25,232 nucleotides of DNA. Origin: Vitrella brassicaformis CCMP3155. Lineage: Eukaryota > Protista > Chromerida. Below, piece after piece: positions 4,289 to 25,232 of the stretch (its first letter is position 1; each line of letters starts with the position of its first letter). The DNA is taken from assembly GCA_001179505.1 (NCBI GenBank), contig CDMY01000743.1:1-25232 (forward strand), read 5' to 3'. The notes beneath the pieces were generated by a model, which did no database searches, was not told the origin of the DNA, and saw only the letters and a list, made by a program, of their open reading frames with translations. The translations under genes and the position numbers were made by a program.

Positions 4289-5328
4289 CACGAGAGAGAG
4301 GCAGGGAAGCTAGCGGCTCAGAGAAGGAAGGAAAGGAAGAGATGAGCGATCAGAGAGAGAGAGAGAAGGGAGAGCTGCCGACTGGACGAGGTGCGCTGGA
4401 TGGATAGACGGAAGGACGCAGGCGGGGGAGGGGTTACTGGTCTCTCTCTTCCGTTACGCTCCGCTCCCTCACGTTTCGAATTCGGATGACTGTTTCAAAT
4501 TCGCATGCGGATCGCTTCGCCGATCTACCAGACAATCGAGGAAGAGAGCCTCAGTGCAAATGATGCTCGGAAGCAAGCCGGGTGCTGCTGCTGACCCGCT
4601 GCCTCATATGCTCCAATCTCGACGATATGTGCGGGTGCATACATGACCCACCGCAACTCTTCCTCTCATATATGCCGCCGGGTTCTAGGAGGCCTGCACA
4701 AATGCAGCAAGAGAGAACGAACGTGGGGAACCTTTGGTTGGTGCCTGCCGGCCATGGTCGCCTTTTTCTTTTCCGAGAAGGGACGCACCGGATGCGTAGC
4801 GCGCAGTGGCGGCTGACACCATCCAACCATTCCCATTGCCCCCAGTGCACGTGCACCGATGTCATGTAATGTCCTGCAGCGCGGCCGACCTTCCCACTAA
4901 ATTTTACCGATGTTCGCGGACAATCAAACTCCTCATCATTTATGTAGAATGAAACGTGAGCTGTAAGCGGGCTCCTGGCGACGAGGCTCCTCCAGGACTT
5001 GCGAGCGACCACCTATCATGCCTGTTGGTCCATCACGACTAAATCTGCTTAGCGAGGTCGTTCGTTCGTTCGTTCGTTCGTTAGCCTTTAACGGGCCTCC
5101 GACCCGAGGCAAAAGGAAAGAGTTCGCACGCACTCGTCAGTTCTTTGTCGCATGGACGGACTGCATTTCACAGACACGGATGTGGCAAAAGCATAGGTAT
5201 CACGTGGTGATGGATGGTGATGGATGTGGGAAGAAAAGCAAGGCAGTGACTATCTCTTGATCCTGGCACTCACACCTACACACACACAGACCCGCCCGCA
5301 CACACACACTACGTATGTGTATACACAT

Positions 5329-5330
<2 letters not shown>

Positions 5331-5362
<32 letters not shown>

Positions 5363-5363
5363 T
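5331..5363. repeat. (TG)n microsatellite
   Basis: Near-pure tg dinucleotide run. Confidence 0.9.
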
Positions 5364-5441
5364 GGGTGCAGAGGGGCGGGTGGCGTGAAAGCAACTGATG
5401 CAGTGCCACCAACGAGCAAGCAGGCACGCAACAAACAAAAG

Positions 5442-5664
5442 ATGACAACTTGCATTAATCGTAACACTCGTCTGTGTGTCCGTGACACTCATATAAATAC
5501 AGTCCCATGAGCACGCAGAGTAAAACAGGCTCAAGGGGAGGAGGGATCGATCCCCGCCCCATCAGCACATCCCAGCCCCGCAAACCCCCCCCTCCCTCCC
5601 CCACGCAGACAGTAACTAGTCGCACGCGCGAGGGCGATAGACAAGCGAGAGCGAATCCATCCAA
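5442..5664 (-). mobile_element. 5'-truncated 3' end of a CRE-like non-LTR retrotransposon flanked by a 17-bp TSD
   Basis: Minus strand encodes GWIRSRLSIALARATSYCLRGGGRGGFAGLGCADGAG, matching the C-terminus of the element ending at 21809 (GWIRSRPSIALVRATSYCLRGGGRAFGALGCDGGAG). The 3' UTRs are also similar (ctgcgtgctcatgggactg...aatgcaagt vs ctgcgtattcatgggactg...aatgcaagt). Identical flanks cacgcaacaaacaaaag at 5425-5441 and 5665-5681. Confidence 0.9.
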
Positions 5665-6492
5665 CACGCAACAAACAAAAGTAGTCGCACAGCGGCAGTG
5701 CGAGCAAAAGAACGGAGGTCGTGAAACGCGATATGTCGTGAAACGCTCCTCGCGACGGCGGCAATGCCCTCTTCTTTGAAAGAGTCTTTCCTTGGCGAAG
5801 AAGAGACATTTTGGCGATCATGGACCATAGTCGATCCGCAGCTGTATACTGATTGCTTAGTGACAACCGTGGGGCGGAAGAAAGTGAGCGAGACACGGGA
5901 AGAAGCGGAGGTCTGAAAGAAGAAAAACTCAAAAGAATCAGAGCTTCTCTTGCCTCGATACAAACCTTCACTCTGCTGAAAGGACCGTTCTGACGGAACC
6001 TTTCATGAGTGCGTTCCAATGCGTTCGTCCACTTCGATGTCGCGTGCGTTGAAGGTGGTATTTGTGTCGTCATTCCCATGCATGGCCCATGTCTCTGCCT
6101 CCCCTTTTTCCCTCCTTCCTCGCCCTCCCGCGTTCATGATGGCCTCACACACACTCATGCAATTCATGACGTCAGGCAAGCATGCATACATGCATTCATG
6201 TGGTGATCCAAGGCCTCGTGTATGTTAGAGAATAGGCTGATCTCATGACTCCTCTCGGTGTGCCTTGTTGTCGTTTGCCAGAGAAGAGAGAGAGAGACCC
6301 ATCGGTTTGCCCCCATGTGTTTTCTGACGACAGCCAAGTGAGAGGGGTTTTCTTGACGCATCGCGAGGGTCATTTTCTTACTTCACGTGTGGTGGGTGTT
6401 GTAGGGCAGCGTTGGTGCACGCCTTGATTTCACACATGGATGGGACGGAGTGACCTGCATACATCCATGCATGTTTTCAATCTTGTGATGTG

Positions 6493-6662
6493 AAGTCCAC
6501 ATGTGCATACGCAGGTGTGCGCACAGAGACATTCATGACATACACACACTCCAAGTCCAAACGTGCATGCGCAGGTGTGCGCACAAACGTGCATCCGCAG
6601 GTGTGCGCACAGAGACATTCATGACATACACACATTCCAAGTCCACGCGTACATGCGCAGGT
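6493..6662 (+). repeat. ~58-bp satellite, interstitial block 1
   Basis: Units like cactccaagtccaaacgtgcatgcgcaggtgtgcgcacagagacattcatgacatacaca, the same family as 21861-22128 and 22914-24250. Confidence 0.9.
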
Positions 6663-7184
6663 AGCTCTGCTACCCCATTCTGTGCTTGATGACGCAGCAG
6701 GCTCTTCTCTTGCCGGATCTGGTTCTCCTCACAGAATGCCTTCCACGTACCGGCGATGAGCTCGGCGCCTCCATCGGTCCTCACTGCCTTGGGTATGCGG
6801 CTGGCCATGCAGTAGTGCATGAACGCCTTCGGTGCGGTGGACTTCTTCTTTAGGAAGTAGGCCTGCACATAGCGGCTGTAGTCGTCCATCATGACCATGA
6901 GCCACTTGAATCCTCTCTCGCTGAGCTGTTTGATCTGTGCCAGGTCGACGTGCATGAGATCACCAGGTGCCGAATGACGCAAGGCATCACCAAGGTAGGG
7001 CCGAATCTTCACCTTGGCTTGGACACACACCTCACACTTGTGCTCCTCTCCTTCCTCCTTCTTGCTCCTCTCGACGTCAGGTGCGTTGCGGCACACTTGC
7101 TGCAGTTGGTCGATGGCTGCATCGTTGTAGTGGAGGAAACGCTGGTGAGCGAGCTCCTCGCTGATGACCTCGGCTATCATTGCC
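6663..7184 (-). mobile_element. Ty1/copia integrase fragment (HHCC zinc finger plus DDE core)
   Basis: Minus-strand frame reads AHQRFLH...CEVCVQAK (H-x4-H / CxxC), then MHVDL, MMDDYSR, VRTDGGAE, QNGVAE, the copia integrase signatures. It is truncated right after the catalytic Glu. No LTR, RT or gag nearby. Confidence 0.9.
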
Positions 7185-7240
7185 GCGTGTACTTGGAGGG
7201 GGAGTATGTGATGAATGTCTCTCTGCAAAACTTGCGCATG
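7185..7240 (-). repeat. Single inverted, diverged satellite-like unit in frame with the integrase
   Basis: Reverse complement catgcgcaagttttgcagagagacattcatcacatactccccctccaagtacacgc vs satellite catgcgcaggtgtgcgcacagagacattcatcatatacacacactccaagtcgacgc (~80% by eye). Confidence 0.8.
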
Positions 7241-7246
7241 GACCAG

Positions 7247-7414
7247 CCAAACGTGCATGCGCAGGTGTGCGCACAGAGACATTCATTGCATACACACACT
7301 CCAAATCCAAACATGAATGCGCAGGTGTGCGCACAGAGACATTCATTGTATACACACACTCCAAGCCAATGCGCAAGCCAATGCGTGCATGCGCAGGTGT
7401 GCGCACAGAGACAT
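7247..7414 (+). repeat. ~58-bp satellite, interstitial block 2 (runs into gap)
   Basis: Same monomer as block 1; ends at the N-gap. Confidence 0.9.
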
Positions 7415-17459: not shown

Positions 17460-20400
17460 ATGAGAGAGCACGTGTCTGACTACCTCCAACCCCCGCGCTC
17501 CCAGCTCCCTGCAAAGCGAGACACAGACGAGCCCCCATGTTGCGCATGCAACGCGAATGGACGGACTCAGCTGTGCAGAGAAACTGCTCATGCCGCCAGA
17601 AGGGAGCCCTCTGCACTAACTGTGTCAACTGCAAGCGTGGTACCTGCACGAATTTTGTGTATCCCATGCACCCGGTGATTTGCAGTGGTGATGTTGAATC
17701 TTCCCCTTCTGACGGCCCTGCCGCACCCTCCCCGGCCTCCTTCGTCGATGACAAGATGCAGGAGGCCTTCGGCGAGCCCCTCGTCAACTCGCCCGGCGAT
17801 GCGGGCTTTCCTGAGTGGGAGGAGTATCATCAGCGGGTCTGTCAGCTTCGCCTACGCTGTGTGACCCTATCCGATGGCAACCTTGGGGAAGCTATTGCTG
17901 ATGCTGTCGCTGACGAGGTGGAGAGCATTGCCGGACAGGAGGCGCCTGCAAAACGGCTCTTCGTCTTCATCCGCACACTGATCCAGCGAGATCCCGATGT
18001 GCGGCAAACCAAGGACATCCGCCGGGTGGTCTGGCGGCGGCTGGAGATGTGGCGGGACGGGCTGGTGGAGGCGCTCTGCGAGGCTGAGCGACTGGACCAG
18101 CAGTTCGCCACCACTCAGCCCCCTCTTGACGACGAGTCCGTCTACCGCATCTTCAACAGACTCATGCAGGGCAAGATCCGGGCGGCCGTCCGCTTCGTCA
18201 CCGAGAAGGGGGGGCGGGGGTGTCCTCCATCCTTCTGCTCAAGCTGAGAAGCGCCCACNNNNNNNNNNNNNNNNNNNNNNNNNNNNNNNNNNNNNNNNNN
18301 NNNNNNNNNNNNNNNNNNNNNNNNNNNNNNNNNNNNNNNNNNNNNNNNNNNNNNNNNNNNNNNNNNNNNNNNNNNNNNNNNNNNNNNNNNNNNNNNNNNN
18401 NNNNNNNNNNNNNNNNNNNNNNNNNNNNNNNNNNNNNNNNNNNNNNNNNNNNNNNNNNNNNNNNNNNNNNNNNNNNNNNNNNNNNNNNNNNNNNNNNNNN
18501 NNNNNNNNNNNNNNNNNNNNNNNNNNNNNNNNNNNNNNNNNNNNNNNNNNNNNNNNNNAGCTGTGCAGAGAAACTGCTCATGCCGCCAGAAGGGAGCCCT
18601 CTGCACTAACTGTGTCAACTGCAAGCGTGGTACCTGCACGAATTTTGTGTATCCCATGCACCCGGTGATTTGCAGTGGTGATGTTGAATCTTCCCCTTCT
18701 GACGGCCCTGCCGCACCCTCCCCGGCCTCCTTCGTCGATGACAAGATGCAGGAGGCCTTCGGCGAGCCCCTCGTCAACTCGCACGGCGATGCGGGCTTTC
18801 CTGAGTGGGAGGAGTATCATCAGCGGGTCTGTCAGCTTCGCCTACGCTGTGTGACCCTATCCGATGGCAACCTTGGCCGAGCTATTGCTGATGCTGTCGC
18901 TGACGAGGTGGGGAGCATTGCCGGGCAGGAGGCGCGTGCAGAACGGCTCTTCGTCTCCATCCGCACACTCATCCAGCGAGATCCCGATGTGCGGCAAACC
19001 AAGGACATCCGCCGGGTGGTCTGGCGGCGGCTGGAGATGTGGCGGGACGGGCTGGTGGAGGCGCTCTGCGAGGCTGAGCGACTGGACCAGCAGTTCGCCA
19101 CCACTCAGCCCCCTCTTGACGACGAGTCCGTCTACCGCATCTTCAACAGACTCATGCAGGGCAAGATCCGGGCGGCCGTCCGCTTCGTCACCGAGAAGGG
19201 GGGGCGGGGGTGTCCTCCATCCTTCTGCTCAAGCTGAGAAGCGCCCACCAGGCGTCACACTGCTCGACGTCCCTCGCGAGAAACACCCACCGCAGCAGCA
19301 GCCATGCGAGGAGGCCTTCCTTCCCTGCGACTCCCTCCCTCCCCTTATATATATATTATATTTAGACATGGACATCACTGAGTCAACGGCGGAGCGCACT
19401 ATACGAAGCCTGAGCGGGAGCGCTGGGCCGACTGGAGGCGACGTGGACTTCTGGCAGGGGCTCCTGCTTCGCTTCGGCGCCAAGAGCGGCCGCCTTCGCT
19501 CGGCAGTGGCTTCTCCCGTGTCCGCCCTGGCCAAAACCATTGTTCCCTGAGACAACATCAAGGCCCTGCGGTTGTGCCGCCTCATCGCACTCGACAAATG
19601 CCCGGGGGTCCGCCCGATTGGCATCGAAGAGGTCCTCTCTCGCCTGGCGGGGAAATGCACGGGCACCGGCGACTCGATCTGACCTGGAGACTGCGGCACC
19701 GATCAGCTGTGCATCGGTGAAGGCGGGCATCGAGGGGGCCGTGCATGCTATGAACGACATCTTCCAAGAGGATGGGACTGAAGGCTTTCTGCTGGTGGAT
19801 GCGAACAACGCTTTCAACAGCATCAGTCGACCTGGAGCCATCTGGAACACTCGTGTACTGTGGCCCCGCTGCTCTCGTCACGTGTCCAACACCTATTGAG
19901 GCTTCGCCGGCCTCTACCTGCAAGACTCGACAGACTGCCTGTGGAGCCGTGAAGTTGTAACCCAGGGCGATTCCTTGGCGGTGTTCGTCTACGCCTGCGG
20001 CAGCCTCCCCCTCATCCATGCTTTGCGGGCCGCCTGTGCTGAGGAGGGGTATCGGATGCCATCGAGTGGGAGGTAAGACGACCTTGGCGGGGATGAGTGT
20101 GGATCAGATGAGGATGAAAAGGAAAAGGGGTCATCAGAAGCCAATGACAAGCCATCAGAAGTGGAAGGGGGAGGGGTGGGTGCGTCTGTGTATCGGGTGT
20201 GGATGTAGATGTGAATGTGGAGGAGAATTCGCCTGTTCTTCGTCGGCCTCTTCGCCTGATGCCCCGCTTCGACAGTGCTGTTATGCGGACGACTCGTCGG
20301 CCCTCGGCAAACTTCTCGCTATCCTCGTGTGGTTCCGTGCCCTGTGTCGCATCGGCCCCTCATATGGCTACCACCCCGACCATGCCAAGTGCTTCCTCGT

Positions 20401-21855
20401 CGTCAAGCCCGACCTCGTGCACACCGCGCGAGAGCTGTTCGCGGCCGAGGGGGTGCAAATCGTCATGGGCAGGAGGTTTGTGGGCGGCTATATGGGTGAC
20501 GAGACGGGGAGGGCAGCCTTCCTCCGCGAGAAGGTCGAGGGTTGAGTGCACAGCGTGCGTGCGCTCATTTCAGCTTCCCGCAACTTCCCCCACACGGCCC
20601 ACGCGGCGATGACGCGGTCCTTGCAGAGAGAGTAGGGCTACGTCCTTCGAGTCGTGCTCACCGACGAGTGTGCGCCGAGCCCTCTTCGTGACGCCATCGT
20701 CAAGGAGTTCCTGCCTGCCCTCTTTGGCGGTCCGGTGACGCCCTCGGAGGCCGACCTGATACTTCTACCTGCCCGCTTCGGCGGCACCGGCATCTGAGAC
20801 CCGCTAAACCGAGCCGCAGCCGCATATCCCGCCTCTCGCGCGGGCACCAAGGTGCTCTCCCGGTCCATCCAAGGCAAGGCACCCTTCCACCCTAGCGATC
20901 ACCGTGCCACGCTTCGTCGCGCCCTCACACAGAGCCGGCAGCAGCAGGGCACCGCCCACAAGGCCAAGCGGGAAGCCGCCCTCCCTCACATCGACCGCCA
21001 GCGCCACCGCGCGATCAATCGCAGCGCCGAATACAAGACGTCCGGCTGGTTGACCACCCTTGTCCTGAAGGCCAGCAAGACTGATCTTGATGCTGCGGGG
21101 TTTCAGATCTCTCAATATGCAATACGGACGGTACCCGCCCGGCCTTGCTGCGCGCCGCGACCACTGCAACAAACCCCTCACCGTCACTCACGCGCTCGAC
21201 TGCAAGCGATACGGCCTGGTGAATCGGCGTCACAACGAGCTGAGGGACACCTTTGCTGAGCTGATTGGGATGGCGTGGGGTGCGGCTGGCGTGCGTCGGG
21301 AGGTGGTGTTGCAGGAGGGGACGAAGGGAGAGGACGGTGTCAGGGCGGACATTGTCCCTCGGAGCGTTTGGGAGCGGCAGGCGGCTGCATCGTATGACGT
21401 CTGCATCACTGATGCTGACGCACCCTCCTATGCTTCCAAGAACCGATCGATCAAGTCCATCCTGAAGGGCCACGAGAATAGCAAGAAGAACAAATACCGC
21501 GAGGCCATTCGCGACTCCCACATGTCCTTCACTCCCTTGGTGGTGACGTGCGACAGAGTGTGGGGACACGATGCCAACGTGATCATCGCCCACATGGCCC
21601 GTGCGCTGATGGAGAAGGAGGGGTGGACGGGACGGGAATTTGGCTATGTGTCTGGCTGGATTCGCTCGCGTCCGTCCATTGCTCTTGTGCGTGCCACTAG
21701 CTACTGCCTGCGTGGGGGAGGGAGGGCGTTTGGGGCATTGGGGTGTGATGGTGGGGCGGGATCGATCTCTCTTCCCCCTAACTGCGTATTCATGGGACTG
21801 GATTCATAAGTGATACGGACACAGGGACGATTGATTCGGTCAATGCAAGTACTTG
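17460..21855 (+). mobile_element. CRE-clade-like non-LTR retrotransposon family B, near full length but heavily mutated (17569-18258 repeated at 18559-19248 across a gap)
   Basis: Motifs across frames: Cys-rich N-terminus (CCACN...NCSCRQKGALCTNC), RPIGIEE (19611), QLCIG, DANNAFN (19798), TQGD (19960), YADD (20282), GYHP...KC, LPARFGG, HALDC..RHN (21189-21236), RADI...DVCITD, KKNKY, FTPLVV, GWIRSR...RATSYCLRG; stop at 21809. Multiple stops and frameshifts. Confidence 0.9.
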
Positions 21856-21860
21856 TTGTG

Positions 21861-22128
21861 TATACACACACTCCAAGTCGACGCGTGCATGCACAGGTGT
21901 GCGCACACAGACATTCATCATATACAGACACTCCAAGTCCAAATGTGCATGCGCCGGTGTGCGCACAGAGATATTCATCATATACCCACACTCCAAGTCC
22001 AAACGTGCAAACGCAGGTGGGCGCACAAAGATATTCATGATATACACCCACTCCAAGTCCAAATGTGCATACGCAGGTGTGCGCACAGAGACGTTCATGA
22101 TATAGACTCCAAGTCGACGCGCGCATGC
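21861..22128 (+). repeat. ~58-bp satellite, about 4.5 units, directly after the family B 3' end
   Basis: tatacacacactccaagtcgacgcgtgcatgcacaggtgtgcgcacacagacattcatca repeated with variants. Confidence 0.95.
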
Positions 22129-22129
22129 A

Positions 22130-22242
22130 AATGGGCGCGGTGAGCGCTGTAACGAATGGGAATCTCTCCCATCCAACCTGGTGACTCTGCTGACTGGCCT
22201 AGCTCCTGTCGCTCAAGCTGCATGGCGCTGAGAGCTCAGGCA
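22130..22242 (-). repeat. Dispersed ~110-bp repeat, copy 2
   Basis: Reverse-complement match to 8173-8282; abuts the satellite. Confidence 0.85.
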
Positions 22243-22580
22243 AACAGCAAGTGAGCAACGGATGTTAACGTACTTGGATCAGGCGAGCTACAGCAAAAGC
22301 ATCAGGCCCAGTTACATTTTTAGGCACATCGCCGGTGCGTGCATGGACCCAAATACACGTACATGGTCTTCTGACGGATGGCCCCTTTTATTGGCTGCAG
22401 GTCGAAACCAACAAGAGCAGAGGGTCTATGCCAGCAGAAATCCCTGCCAATGTGCCTACTGGTCTCCTATATGCGGGTCCTTGGAATGGTTCTGAGCTTT
22501 GTTTCAATAGAGGCGCATCATGGTTAGAATAGGCGTTTTTCCCCTCTTTTTACTGTCTTCCCTGACCTCCAGATTTGCTG

Positions 22581-22791
22581 CTCCAGCTCCTCATGGGCGT
22601 AGAAGCAATTGTTGAGACCTGTACCACCTGGAGACACAGATGTGTCCGTATAGCCATGATCGGTGACACACATCGCAGCCAAACCCTGTTTCGCAAACCG
22701 CACATATGATGTTTGGGTTGCCTCTCAGCTCCTCTCTCCCTTGGGCATACATGCACCTCTCCCCATACTTGCATCCGGTAGACTTATAGCA
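22581..22791 (-). pseudogene. Remnant with CCCH zinc-finger-like motifs
   Basis: CYKSTGCKYGERCMYAQGREELR (22791-22723) resembles the C-x-C-x5-C-x3-H..ELR consensus with H>Q. A second motif NNCFYAHEELE (22613-22581) lies in another frame. Confidence 0.45.
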
Positions 22792-22913
22792 AAAGACAAC
22801 GAAGGACGAAGGCGAACACCGGCTCACGTATTTGTTTCACTACCCTGCCAAACCCCTACACCGCACCGTTTTGAAGTACTTGCCTCCACTCGCCTGCGCT
22901 GTCTCTGCAGCAG

Positions 22914-24250
22914 AGTCGACGTCTGCATGAGCAGGTGTGCACAAAGACATTCATCAAAATTCAAACGTGCATGCGCAGGTGTGCGCACACAGAGACATCC
23001 ATCATATACACTCCAAGTCCAAACGGGTATGCGCAGGTGTGCGCACACAGACATTCATCATATACGTACTCTCCAAGTCGACGCGTGCATGCGCAGGTAT
23101 ATACGCACACAGACATTCAACATACACACACGCCAAGTCCAAACGGGTATGCGCAGCTGTGCGCACACAGCGTTCATCATATACACACACTCCAAGTCGA
23201 CGCGTGCACGCGCAGGTGTGCCAACAAACATATACACACACTGCAAGTCCAAACGTGCATGCGCAGTTGTGCGCACAGAGACATTCATCATATACGCACA
23301 CTCCCGGTGGGCGCACAGAGACACTCAAAATATACACACACTCCAAGTCGACACGTGCATGCGCAGTTGTGCGCACAGAGACATTCATCATATACGCACA
23401 CTCCAAGCGCAGTTGTGCGCACAGAGACATTCATCATATACGCACACTCCCGGTGGGCGCACAGAGACACTCAAAATATACACACACTCCAAGTCGACAC
23501 GTGCATGCGCAGTTGTGCGCACAGAGACATTCATCATATACGCACACTCCAAGTCGACGCGTGCATGCACAGGTATATTCGCACACAGACATTTAACATA
23601 CACACACGCCAAGTCGACGCGTGCATGCGCAGGTTTGCGCACAGAGATATTCATCATATACACTGACTTCACCTCCAGACGCACACAGACATTCATCATA
23701 TACACACGCCCCAAGTCGACACCCCAAGTCGACACGTGCATGCGCAGGTGTGCGCACAGAAACATTCATCATATATACACACTCCAAGTCGACGCGTGCA
23801 TGCGCAGGTGTGCGCACAAACATATACACACACTGCAAGTCCAAACGTGCATGCGCAGTTGTGCGCACAGAGACATTCAGAATATTCACACACTCCAAGT
23901 CGACGCGTGCATGCGCAGGTGGGCGCACAGAGACATTCATCATATACGCACACTCCCGGTGGGCGCACAGAGACACTCAAAATATACACACTCTCCAAGT
24001 CGACGCGTGCATGTGCAGTTGTGCGCACAGAGACACTCAAAATATACACACACTCCAAGTCGACGCGTGCATGCGCAGGTGGGCGCACACAGACATTCAT
24101 CATATACGCACACTCCCGGTGGGCGCACAGAGAGACTCAAAATATACACACACTCCAAGTCGACGCGTGCATGCGCAGGTGGGCGCACAGCGACATTCAT
24201 CATATACGCACACTCCCGGTGGGCGCACAGAGACACTCAAAATATACACA
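22914..24250 (+). repeat. Main subtelomeric satellite array (~1.3 kb), ~58-bp monomer plus ~40-bp deletion variant
   Basis: Long unit ...ctccaagtcgacgcgtgcatgcgcaggtgtgcgcacagagacattcatcatatac...; short unit cactcccggtgggcgcacagagacactcaaaatatacaca. Confidence 0.97.
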
Positions 24251-24354
24251 ATAACATCCAACACTCTCGTCGGTGCTTGCTTTCGTTCTCCTTTCTATCT
24301 GTCTGGCTATCTGTGTGGACGATGTGTGCTAGCGTATGTACACGCATTGTGTAG

Positions 24355-25075
24355 CTAGGCTAGCCTGCGTAGGAATTCTGCCAGCTCGTCGTTGTGGTTA
24401 TGATATTCGAAGAGTGCATTGCCAAGTGCCTCCAGATCTGTTATGTGCTGCTCCGAAGCATCGTCCATCAGGTCATTGGCGCTCAGCTGGTCCTCATTTT
24501 GAATACGTATGTAACGACCAGGGTCCAGCACCTGACATCAACAAAACATGGAGAGATGAAGCCCTCGACTTGGAAGCAAAGCACACGAGACGTTGCTTCT
24601 TACGGCTTTCACTTGGTAGTCGATATGCTCGCTGGGACCCTGCATGCATAGTGATGAGATGGGTACCTTCCAGCCCCACAAGCCGGCATTCTTCAACTGC
24701 TCGGGTGTCCTGGAGTACTCCTTTCTTCCAGTTCTGAAAAGAGAGGAGAGAGAACAAGGAGTCCTTGTCGTAGATGAATCACTTCATTTACCCGATGCTC
24801 AGCATGAGGATATTATCTCGCTTGCCATCCCATTTTTTCATGGCCTCTACAGCGCCAATGATCGATGGATTGTTTGCCAACACACCGCCATCCACTAGAA
24901 TGCGAGGGTTGAGTGTCAGCGGATCGTCGGCCATAGGCAGCACTTCCATCTCGTAGGCGGGAAAATACGTGGGAGCAGCGGTAGAGGCAGACACGCAGTC
25001 GGCCAGAAAGAAGTTGAAGTCTTCTCGCTCTCTTGCCTTCGAAGTCTTGAAGATGACAGCACGATCATTCCTACA
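24355..25075 (-). pseudogene. Patatin-like phospholipase, intact 3' half (~196 codons), 5' half replaced by telomere
   Basis: Exons 25075-24792, 24733-24604, 24531-24355 with GT-AG introns of 58 and 72 nt. Translation: CRNDRAVIFKTSKARE...FFLADCVSASTAAPTYFP...LVDGGVLANNP...LMLSIG|TG...WGWKVPI...DYQVKA|VLDPGRYIRIQ...MDDASE...RRLA*. SAAPTYF, DGG and LSIGTG are patatin motifs; the N-terminal GGGxR and GxSxG motifs are absent. Confidence 0.92.
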
Positions 25076-25077
25076 CT

Positions 25078-25232
25078 TTTAGGGTTTAGGGTTTAGGGTT
25101 TAGGGTTTAGGGTTTAGGGTTTAGGGTGTAGGGTTTAGGGTTTTAGGGTTTAGGGTTTAGGGTTTAGGGTTTAGGGTTTAGGGTTTAGGGTTTAGGGTTT
25201 AGGGTTTAGGGTTTAGGGTTTAGGGTTTAGGG
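25078..25232 (+). repeat. Telomeric repeat (TTTAGGG)n, about 22 units
   Basis: G-rich strand runs 5'->3' to the sequence end. Variants TGTAGGG (25127-25133) and TTTTAGGG (25141-25148). Confidence 0.99.

What the first reader, a model, noticed from the sequence alone, without database searches (positions are those of the whole stretch)
24355..25232. Telomere added directly inside a patatin phospholipase gene: candidate de novo telomere / chromosome healing site
Seen: the patatin frame is open and patatin-like to within a few bases of the first repeat (…gatcattcctacacT|TTTAGGG). The retained 196 codons and two introns have no lesions, but the 5' half with the oxyanion and GxSxG motifs, and the promoter, is gone. 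The junction has T-run microhomology to the repeat and no subtelomeric buffer, and the satellite lies internal to the gene. Known: telomerase heals breaks using a few bases of homology, and some protists fragment chromosomes in a programmed way. Inference: a recent break healed by telomerase, or a gene piece plus telomere translocated onto this end. If many ends in this genome cut through genes, that would point to an undescribed programmed or frequent fragmentation process. The minus-strand AG/TAG just inside the junction could alternatively be a splice acceptor, placing the break in an intron.
Basis: partly seen in the sequence, partly recalled or inferred. Interest (0 to 1): 0.75.

Follow-up and report, generated by a model that had tools for sequence, protein, structure and literature searches.

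The report
Telomere capping a truncated patatin gene
In the assembly of the alga Vitrella brassicaformis, one scaffold ends with telomere repeats joined directly to the back half of a lipase (patatin) gene, most likely a broken chromosome end that telomerase re-capped, as is well known in its malaria-parasite relatives; the sequencing reads that would prove it could not be examined.

Summary
The window is the whole scaffold C743 of Vitrella brassicaformis CCMP3155. On its minus strand lie three intact exons (196 codons, two GT-AG introns) of a patatin-like gene. They keep the catalytic Asp motif but lack the oxyanion-hole and GxSxG half. A 22-unit telomere array starts at 25078 and runs to the scaffold end.

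The remnant is single-copy. Neither Pfam nor a subfamily profile finds an orphan 5' half in the 72.7 Mb assembly. All 18 terminal arrays I examined point the telomere-proper way, each abuts different DNA, and C743's last 3 kb shares nothing with the other 17 ends.

I verified a second case: scaffold C20's array cuts a copy of a large membrane-protein family 29 nt upstream of a conserved intron acceptor. In C743 the junction is 6 nt upstream of a possible acceptor.

The best reading is a terminal deletion healed by de novo telomere addition, as in Plasmodium falciparum 3D7, where 5 of 28 ends are healed. Programmed fragmentation is not supported: 2 of 18 ends, no shared motif.

Three earlier first-reader notes flag similar ends on other pieces of this genome.

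The parts
25078..25232 (+). Terminal telomere array: 22 units of the 7-base repeat, G-rich strand running 3' to the scaffold end. The first 7 units are perfect, followed by two variant units.
   Evidence: TRF; sequence; proximal purity 0.83.
25077..25077 (.). Junction base (T) that could be original sequence or the first added base. The last unambiguous gene base is 25076.
   Evidence: Read directly.
25071..25076 (-). gtgtag, immediately inside the junction. It is either codons Cys-Arg of the exon or the last 6 nt of an intron with a YAG acceptor before G at 25070.
   Evidence: The alignment to homologues does not decide: C-R sits where homologues have I/V plus a polar residue.
24792..25076 (-). 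Patatin exon A, 5'-truncated. It holds the AAPTYF motif, the catalytic-Asp motif LVDGG, NNP, and the start of SIGTG.
   Evidence: Pfam PF01734 at E 9e-9; best non-self relatives are 36-42% identical.
24734..24791 (-). Intron 1, 58 nt, GT..AG, phase 2.
   Evidence: agrees with the annotated protein P0001.
24604..24733 (-). Patatin exon B, 130 nt.
24532..24603 (-). Intron 2, 72 nt, GT..AG, phase 0.
24355..24531 (-). Patatin exon C, 58 codons plus the stop codon.
21858..24224 (.). Satellite with a unit of about 60 bp, internal to the gene. It is a dispersed family, not specific to telomeres.
   Evidence: TRF; 247 matches on at least 30 scaffolds; absent from the other 17 examined ends.

Best explanation
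This is a real chromosome end produced by a terminal deletion. A double-strand break fell inside a patatin-like phospholipase gene, either in the exon or within the last 6-10 nt of the preceding intron. The break lay in a repeat-rich, satellite-bearing compartment of a Vitrella brassicaformis chromosome. The distal piece, carrying the promoter and the oxyanion-hole/GxSxG half, was lost. Telomerase then added repeats directly onto the resected 3' end with at most a few bases of homology. The retained 196 codons are a catalytically dead relic, because no nucleophile serine is left. The relic is still undecayed because the event is young on an evolutionary scale. Shown: the anatomy, the absence of a second copy or a 5' half in the assembly, the atypical subtelomere, and a second end of the same kind. 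Inferred: that the array is terminal in the cell, that telomerase did the joining, and that the event is recent.
For: (1) The array sits at the scaffold end in the telomere-proper orientation, as do all 18 terminal arrays examined. Breaks at interstitial tracts would give both orientations. (2) The gene is truncated exactly at the array. About 130-145 N-terminal residues expected from homologues are missing. (3) The 826-nt remnant is single-copy. Pfam Patatin and a profile of the N-terminal halves of its 14 nearest relatives find only otherwise accounted-for patatin loci. The one orphan 5' piece, at the left end of C903, is a roughly 95% DNA duplicate of a different single-exon paralogue that is only 38% identical to the remnant. 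(4) C743's last 3 kb shares nothing with the 17 other ends, although many of those share subtelomeric families with each other. (5) The array is perfect from its first unit, as at C20, C720 and C539, whereas other ends begin with degenerate units. (6) A second case: C20's array cuts a family gene whose paralogues stay conserved for at least 1.3 kb further upstream. (7) Runs X1 and X2 hold 0.99 of the 93 sampled 31-mers of 24240-25120, of which about 3 should span the junction. This is weak evidence, since these runs may be the source reads. (8) There is precedent in a related lineage: P. falciparum heals spontaneous and induced breaks this way, and 5 of 28 3D7 ends have repeats fused into or next to genes (PMC5550746, PMC5513710).
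Against: The assembly is a short-read scaffold set of 1064 pieces, so absence of the 5' half is not proof of loss. The junction lies next to a possible splice acceptor, which is where an intronic tract would also sit. The remnant shows no decay, which also fits an intact, functional gene.
Confidence: 0.6

Rival explanations
1. An interstitial telomere-type tract lies inside an intron of an intact patatin gene. The short-read assembler stopped in the tract, or walked from a short tract into true telomere reads. The 5' exons exist in the organism but were not assembled.
For: A candidate acceptor gtgtag|G lies 6 nt inside the junction. The remnant is undecayed. C571 shows a long array that is not at a scaffold end. 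The assembly is fragmented into 1064 scaffolds.
Against: No scaffold carries the matching 5' exons. No examined scaffold begins with an array in the 'wrong' orientation, as the other side of a split tract would: 18 of 18 are telomere-proper. The array is at least 155 nt and as long as those at other ends.
Confidence: 0.17
2. This is an older, stable end. A 3' fragment of a patatin gene was duplicated or translocated into a subtelomere, or eroded step by step, and the adjacency to the telomere is not a single recent healing event.
For: The surrounding scaffold is repeat-rich, with satellite and a Copia integrase fragment, like a junk compartment. Arrays start at different points of shared subtelomeric elements at other ends, which shows ongoing end turnover.
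Against: No parent copy exists: the remnant is single-copy and its nearest relative anywhere is about 40% identical. The 196 codons and four splice sites are intact. The array has clean proximal units.
Confidence: 0.1
3. The scaffold end is chimeric. Telomere reads were joined to the gene by an assembly or library artefact.
For: It is a short-read scaffold assembly. C571 shows that arrays can be scaffolded to unrelated DNA.
Against: At most 1-4 bases are shared between the gene and the repeat, too few for a false k-mer join. Two runs hold 0.99 of the sampled 31-mers across the junction stretch. A second end (C20) has the same anatomy.
Confidence: 0.08
4. Vitrella has programmed or site-preferring chromosome fragmentation, and this junction is one of its products.
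For: Two of 18 ends cut genes. Both genes point away from the end. One junction lies 29 nt upstream of a demonstrated acceptor (C20) and the other 6 nt upstream of a candidate acceptor (C743). Three further first-reader notes report similar ends (unchecked).
Against: The junction flanks share no motif. Sixteen of 18 ends abut non-coding, low-complexity DNA. The frequency matches spontaneous healing in P. falciparum (PMC5550746).
Confidence: 0.05

Closest known systems
Chromosome breakage and telomere healing in Plasmodium falciparum (Scherf & Mattei 1992; Bottius et al. 1998; Calhoun et al. 2017, PMC5550746)
   Same: [quoted passage not shown] The usual telomere-associated repeats are absent. 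A truncated pseudogene is left at the end. The events occur in a variable, multi-copy compartment. The lineage is related (chromerids are sister to Apicomplexa) and uses the same type of 7-base repeat.
   Different: In Plasmodium the events were shown with clones, long reads, induced breaks and telomerase assays. Here only one short-read assembly was available. The cut gene is a single-copy patatin, not a variant-antigen gene.
De novo telomere addition at double-strand breaks in yeast and human terminal deletions / neotelomeres (Pennaneach et al. 2006; PMC3136441; PMC11293586)
   Same: Repeats are added onto non-telomeric sequence with 0-4 nt of homology, and the distal segment is lost.
   Different: Those cases are somatic or pathological events with known seed preferences (TG-rich). 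The C743 flank (…TCCTACAC) is not G/T-rich.
Programmed chromosome fragmentation in ciliates and Ascaris (e.g. the Tetrahymena Cbs; Oxytricha, PMC3558436; Paramecium, PMC13076228)
   Same: Telomeres are added de novo to internal sites, sometimes near or in genes.
   Different: Those systems use a germline/soma split, thousands of sites and, in part, conserved breakage signals. None of these is seen here.
Interstitial telomeric sequences inserted at repaired breaks (PMC5388398)
   Same: Telomere-type repeats lie next to unique DNA, often in introns.
   Different: Such tracts are flanked on both sides by unique DNA. Here nothing follows the array in the assembly.
Patatin-like phospholipases (Pfam PF01734, PNPLA)
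   Same: The remnant carries the C-terminal half of the domain with the catalytic Asp (DGG), and the SIGTG block that is conserved among its nearest homologues.
   Different: It lacks the GGxR oxyanion hole and the GxSxG serine, so it cannot be an active member. Its nearest relatives are only 36-42% identical.

Membership tests
Patatin-like phospholipase (PF01734) | Domain match above the curated cut-off | tested here: met
   Exon A scores 36.2 bits against 27.7, E 9e-9, but covers only profile positions 137-186 of 191.
Patatin-like phospholipase (PF01734) | Catalytic Asp in a DG[AG] motif | tested here: met
   LVDGG is aligned with the invariant DGG of 8 homologues.
Patatin-like phospholipase (PF01734) | Nucleophile Ser in GxSxG and the glycine-rich oxyanion hole | tested here: not met
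   Both are absent from the locus. The frame hits a stop in the first repeat unit. No orphan N-terminal half is present in the assembly. The locus is therefore a gene fragment, not an active member.
Healed chromosome break (de novo telomere addition) | Telomere array in G-strand-3'-out orientation at the physical end | tested here: inconclusive
   The orientation is correct and the array runs to the scaffold end.
Healed chromosome break (de novo telomere addition) | Repeats abut unique or coding sequence, without the subtelomeric elements seen at other ends | tested here: met
   The junction is inside a patatin gene. There is no similarity to the 17 other ends, many of which share families with each other.
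Healed chromosome break (de novo telomere addition) | The distal part of the interrupted sequence is missing from the genome (or present only in an unbroken allele) | tested here: met
   The part is missing from the 72.7 Mb assembly. This holds at assembly level only.
Healed chromosome break (de novo telomere addition) | Reads span the junction and show only repeats beyond it | not testable with these tools
The only evidence is the indirect 31-mer share of 0.99 in X1 and X2.
Programmed chromosome fragmentation | Conserved breakage signal, or reproducible sites at many ends | tested here: not met
   The 18 junction flanks are all different. Only 2 of 18 cut a recognisable gene.
Interstitial telomeric sequence | Unique sequence on both sides of the tract | tested here: inconclusive
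   Nothing follows the array in the scaffold. No partner scaffold with a same-orientation array at its start was seen among those listed. The list of arrays was not exhaustive.

The most novel reading that the evidence does not exclude
Vitrella's satellite-rich, multi-copy compartments break and are re-capped often. Healing may favour sites just upstream of intron acceptors of genes that point away from the end: one junction lies 29 nt from a demonstrated acceptor (C20) and the other 6 nt from a candidate acceptor (C743). If so, telomere-initiated transcripts could splice into and express the remnants, making this an end-turnover system in a free-living relative of Apicomplexa that predates parasite antigenic variation.
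Probability: 0.1. Interest if true: 0.65.

Novelty: new member of a known kind. Interest (0 to 1): 0.35.

Why it matters
If the end is real, telomerase-mediated chromosome healing is at work in a free-living photosynthetic relative of the Apicomplexa. In malaria parasites this repair route shapes subtelomeres and deletes genes such as hrp2. Finding it in a chromerid would suggest the route is ancestral to the group rather than an adaptation to parasitism. It also flags Vitrella's satellite-rich compartments as unstable. In practical terms, the annotated 154-aa 'PNPLA domain-containing protein' at this locus is a dead fragment and should not be counted as a lipase.

Tried and rejected
I worked beside them (references end at 25075 or 25076).
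- The left end of C903 looked like the lost 5' half: right family, right orientation, at a scaffold end. I rejected it. It is a roughly 95% duplicate of the 5' end of the intact single-exon patatin at C903:4584-6629, whose C-terminal half is only 38% identical to the remnant, and no further copy of that paralogue's 3' half exists.
- The C189 N-terminal patatin hit is part of an intact multi-exon gene of another subfamily.
- The look-up of encoding contigs with P0001 returned nothing on record.
- The search for homologous proteins found only the annotated protein itself.
- The full HMMER search found no relative above 42% identity apart from one much shorter partial overlap among the weak hits, so no orthologue settles the exon-or-intron question.
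- The metagenome scan gave a best hit of 40% identity, from bacterial patatins, and no unbroken orthologue.
- Pfam scans of open frames next to ten other ends and of nine window ORFs gave nothing except an rve integrase fragment. The open frames at the other ends look non-coding.
- A literature search found no paper on Vitrella telomeres or healing. Scherf & Mattei 1992 and Bottius et al. 1998 are not held and are cited only through PMC5550746 and PMC5513710.
- The exons were searched one by one by reference. I made no joined spliced model; the only spliced sequence used is the database's own P0001.

Full report
**What is there.** The window is the complete scaffold G000:C743 (25,232 bases) of a 72.7 Mb, 1064-scaffold assembly. 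The word search names the organism as Vitrella brassicaformis CCMP3155. The scaffold has five 300-N gaps, and the terminal gap-free piece is 18559-25232.
- The minus strand of 24355-25076 carries three exons separated by two canonical GT..AG introns: exon A 24792-25076, intron 24734-24791, exon B 24604-24733, intron 24532-24603, exon C 24355-24531 with its stop.
- The public annotation uses the same splice sites but starts at an internal Met (P0001, 154 aa, 'PNPLA domain-containing protein').
- Exon A matches Pfam Patatin over the curated cut-off (E 9e-9), but only the last quarter of the profile, positions 137-186 of 191.
- Aligned with its nearest relatives, exon A keeps the AAPTYF block, the catalytic-Asp DGG motif, NNP and SIGTG.
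- Those relatives are 300-350 residues long and carry about 130-145 residues, including the oxyanion hole and GxSxG, before the point where exon A starts. Those residues are not in the scaffold.
- From 25078 to the last base there is a 22-unit array of the 7-base telomere repeat, with the G-rich strand 3'-outward.

**Is the 5' half elsewhere?**
- Exon A as a protein query and the 826-nt remnant as a DNA query find only themselves in the assembly.
- Pfam Patatin finds eleven places.
- A profile of the N-terminal halves of the fourteen nearest relatives finds eight places, all belonging to other patatin genes.
- One hit looked promising. The left end of C903 holds a patatin 5' part with GGGxRG and GTSTG, running off the scaffold in exactly the orientation needed to continue C743. 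It is, however, a roughly 95% DNA duplicate of the 5' end of an intact single-exon patatin 5 kb further along C903. That gene's C-terminal half is only 38% identical to the remnant. No other copy of that gene's 3' half exists. I reject it as the lost half.
- The C189 hit belongs to an intact multi-exon gene.
- No close orthologue exists in the 1.8-billion-protein library, where nearly all listed hits are 31-51% identical and the few above that are much shorter partial overlaps among the weak hits, or in JGI/ENA metagenome contigs, where the best is 40%.
- At assembly level, therefore, the 5' half is gone.

**Is the array a telomere?** Before the reads filter tripped, a pattern search showed arrays at many scaffold ends. 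I fetched 18 of them.
- All 18 have the telomere-proper orientation, C-rich at left ends and G-rich at right ends. Breaks at interstitial tracts would give both orientations.
- Array lengths are 61-262 nt, so C743's 155 nt is typical.
- Every junction flank is different.
- Many ends share subtelomeric families with one another: C130/C424 at 85% over 1.7 kb, C539/C542/C597 at 77-79% over 1.3-2.3 kb, and shorter blocks among C283, C310, C374, C574 and C720. C743's last 3 kb matches none of them.
- Several ends (C597, C264, C310, C374, C130, C542, C376) begin with degenerate units, as old telomere-proximal repeats do. C743, like C20, C720, C539, C424 and C805, is nearly perfect from the first unit. 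This fits recent addition, though it is only suggestive.

**A second case.** Of the 18 ends, only C743 and C20 have a long, plausibly coding open frame abutting the junction.
- C20's 488-codon frame belongs to a family of TRP-like membrane proteins, with 98 matching stretches in the genome at 60-66% identity.
- The paralogues stay conserved with each other in exon-like blocks for at least 1.3 kb upstream of the point where C20 meets its array.
- Alignment places the C20 junction in an intron, 29 nt upstream of a conserved acceptor.
- The C20 copy is thus also 5'-truncated by a telomere array, with the gene pointing away from the end, as in C743.
- The frames next to the other sixteen ends have no Pfam match and look non-coding.
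- Three first-reader notes on other pieces of this genome describe similar ends (s1-199341, s1-239538, s1-221904). I could not locate or test them.

**Exon or intron?** The six bases inside the C743 junction read gtgtag on the coding strand, followed by G. They may be the codons Cys-Arg, sitting where homologues have I/V plus a polar residue before a semi-conserved Asn. Alternatively they are the last bases of a phase-2 intron. No orthologue is close enough to decide. The frame is open for only three codons beyond that point, which carries no weight.

**Context.** The satellite internal to the gene is a dispersed family with 247 matches on at least 30, mostly small, scaffolds. Several of those scaffolds also carry TRP-like or patatin paralogues. 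The window also holds a Copia-type integrase fragment. C743 and C20 therefore lie in a repeat-rich, poorly assembled, multi-copy compartment, where terminal loss should be tolerated.

**What could not be done.**
The tool itself says this filter also trips by chance and is evidence of nothing.
This also stopped me from completing the census of array-bearing scaffolds.
- The only read-derived hint is indirect. Runs X1 and X2 (one sample, one study) hold 0.99 of 93 sampled 31-mers of 24240-25120. About three of those should span the junction, so most junction words exist in reads. Those runs may be the assembly's own source.
- Telomere-type arrays that are not at a scaffold end do occur. C571 has a 293-nt array followed by a 300-N gap and unique DNA. 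An unchecked note reports a tract in a TRRAP intron (s1-242762). An intronic tract at which the assembler stopped therefore remains the main rival.

**Comparison with what is known.**
- Telomere healing of breaks inside genes is textbook biology in Plasmodium falciparum. Spontaneous and Cas9- or X-ray-induced breaks are repaired with telomere repeats.
- Five of the 28 ends of the 3D7 reference lack the usual telomere-associated repeats and have telomere repeats fused into or next to genes, four of them creating truncated pseudogenes (PMC5550746; PMC5513710, citing Bottius et al. 1998 and Scherf & Mattei 1992).
- Two gene-cutting ends out of 18 in Vitrella is the same order of frequency and needs no new process.
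- Nothing resembling a ciliate-type breakage signal is shared by the flanks.
- I found no paper describing Vitrella telomeres or healing.

**Verdict.**
- The healing interpretation is the best-supported reading (about 0.6), but it lacks read-level proof.
- Programmed fragmentation is not supported (about 0.05).
- This is a new member of a known kind, of modest interest.
- The one unexplained detail worth a look is that both gene-cutting junctions lie within 30 nt upstream of an intron acceptor (demonstrated in C20, candidate only in C743) in genes pointing away from the end. With n = 2, this may be chance.

Noticed in passing
G000:C20:1-1704 (L044): The terminal array (1-235) abuts a 5'-truncated copy of a large TRP-like membrane-protein family. 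The junction lies 29 nt upstream of a conserved intron acceptor, and the paralogues continue for at least 1.3 kb upstream.
   Followed up: yes
G000:C571:265796-266388 (L056, L105): A 293-nt telomere-type array (42 units) sits inside a 331-kb scaffold and is followed by a 300-N gap and then unique DNA. It is either a mis-scaffolded chromosome end or a long interstitial tract.
   Followed up: partly
G000:C903:1-460 and 4584-6629 (L043): The scaffold starts inside a roughly 95% identical duplicate of the 5' end, with upstream region, of an intact single-exon 681-aa patatin gene on the same scaffold. A diverged block of the same satellite lies between the two copies (1270-1792).
   Followed up: yes
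window 21858-24224, 6493-6663, 7247-7414: The roughly 60-bp satellite is a dispersed family with 247 matches on at least 30 mostly small scaffolds. It often lies on scaffolds that also carry TRP-like or patatin paralogues (C508, C481, C585, C892, C903). It is absent from the other 17 examined chromosome ends.
   Followed up: partly
window 6533-7282 (-): An open frame with an rve integrase core domain (E 5e-11) and a weak gag-pre-integrase match, embedded in satellite.
   Followed up: partly
L045/L053, L054/L055/L058, L047/L049/L050/L057/L060: Several chromosome ends share subtelomeric sequence families at 75-86% identity, but the arrays start at different points of the shared elements. For example, C542's junction corresponds to a point about 200 nt inside C720's subtelomere. 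This suggests repeated end erosion and re-capping.
   Followed up: partly
window 24240-25120: Two 2023 marine-sediment metagenome runs hold 11-13% of the sampled 31-mers of this stretch. That is more than the repeat array alone can explain and hints at Vitrella-like DNA in sediments.
   Followed up: no
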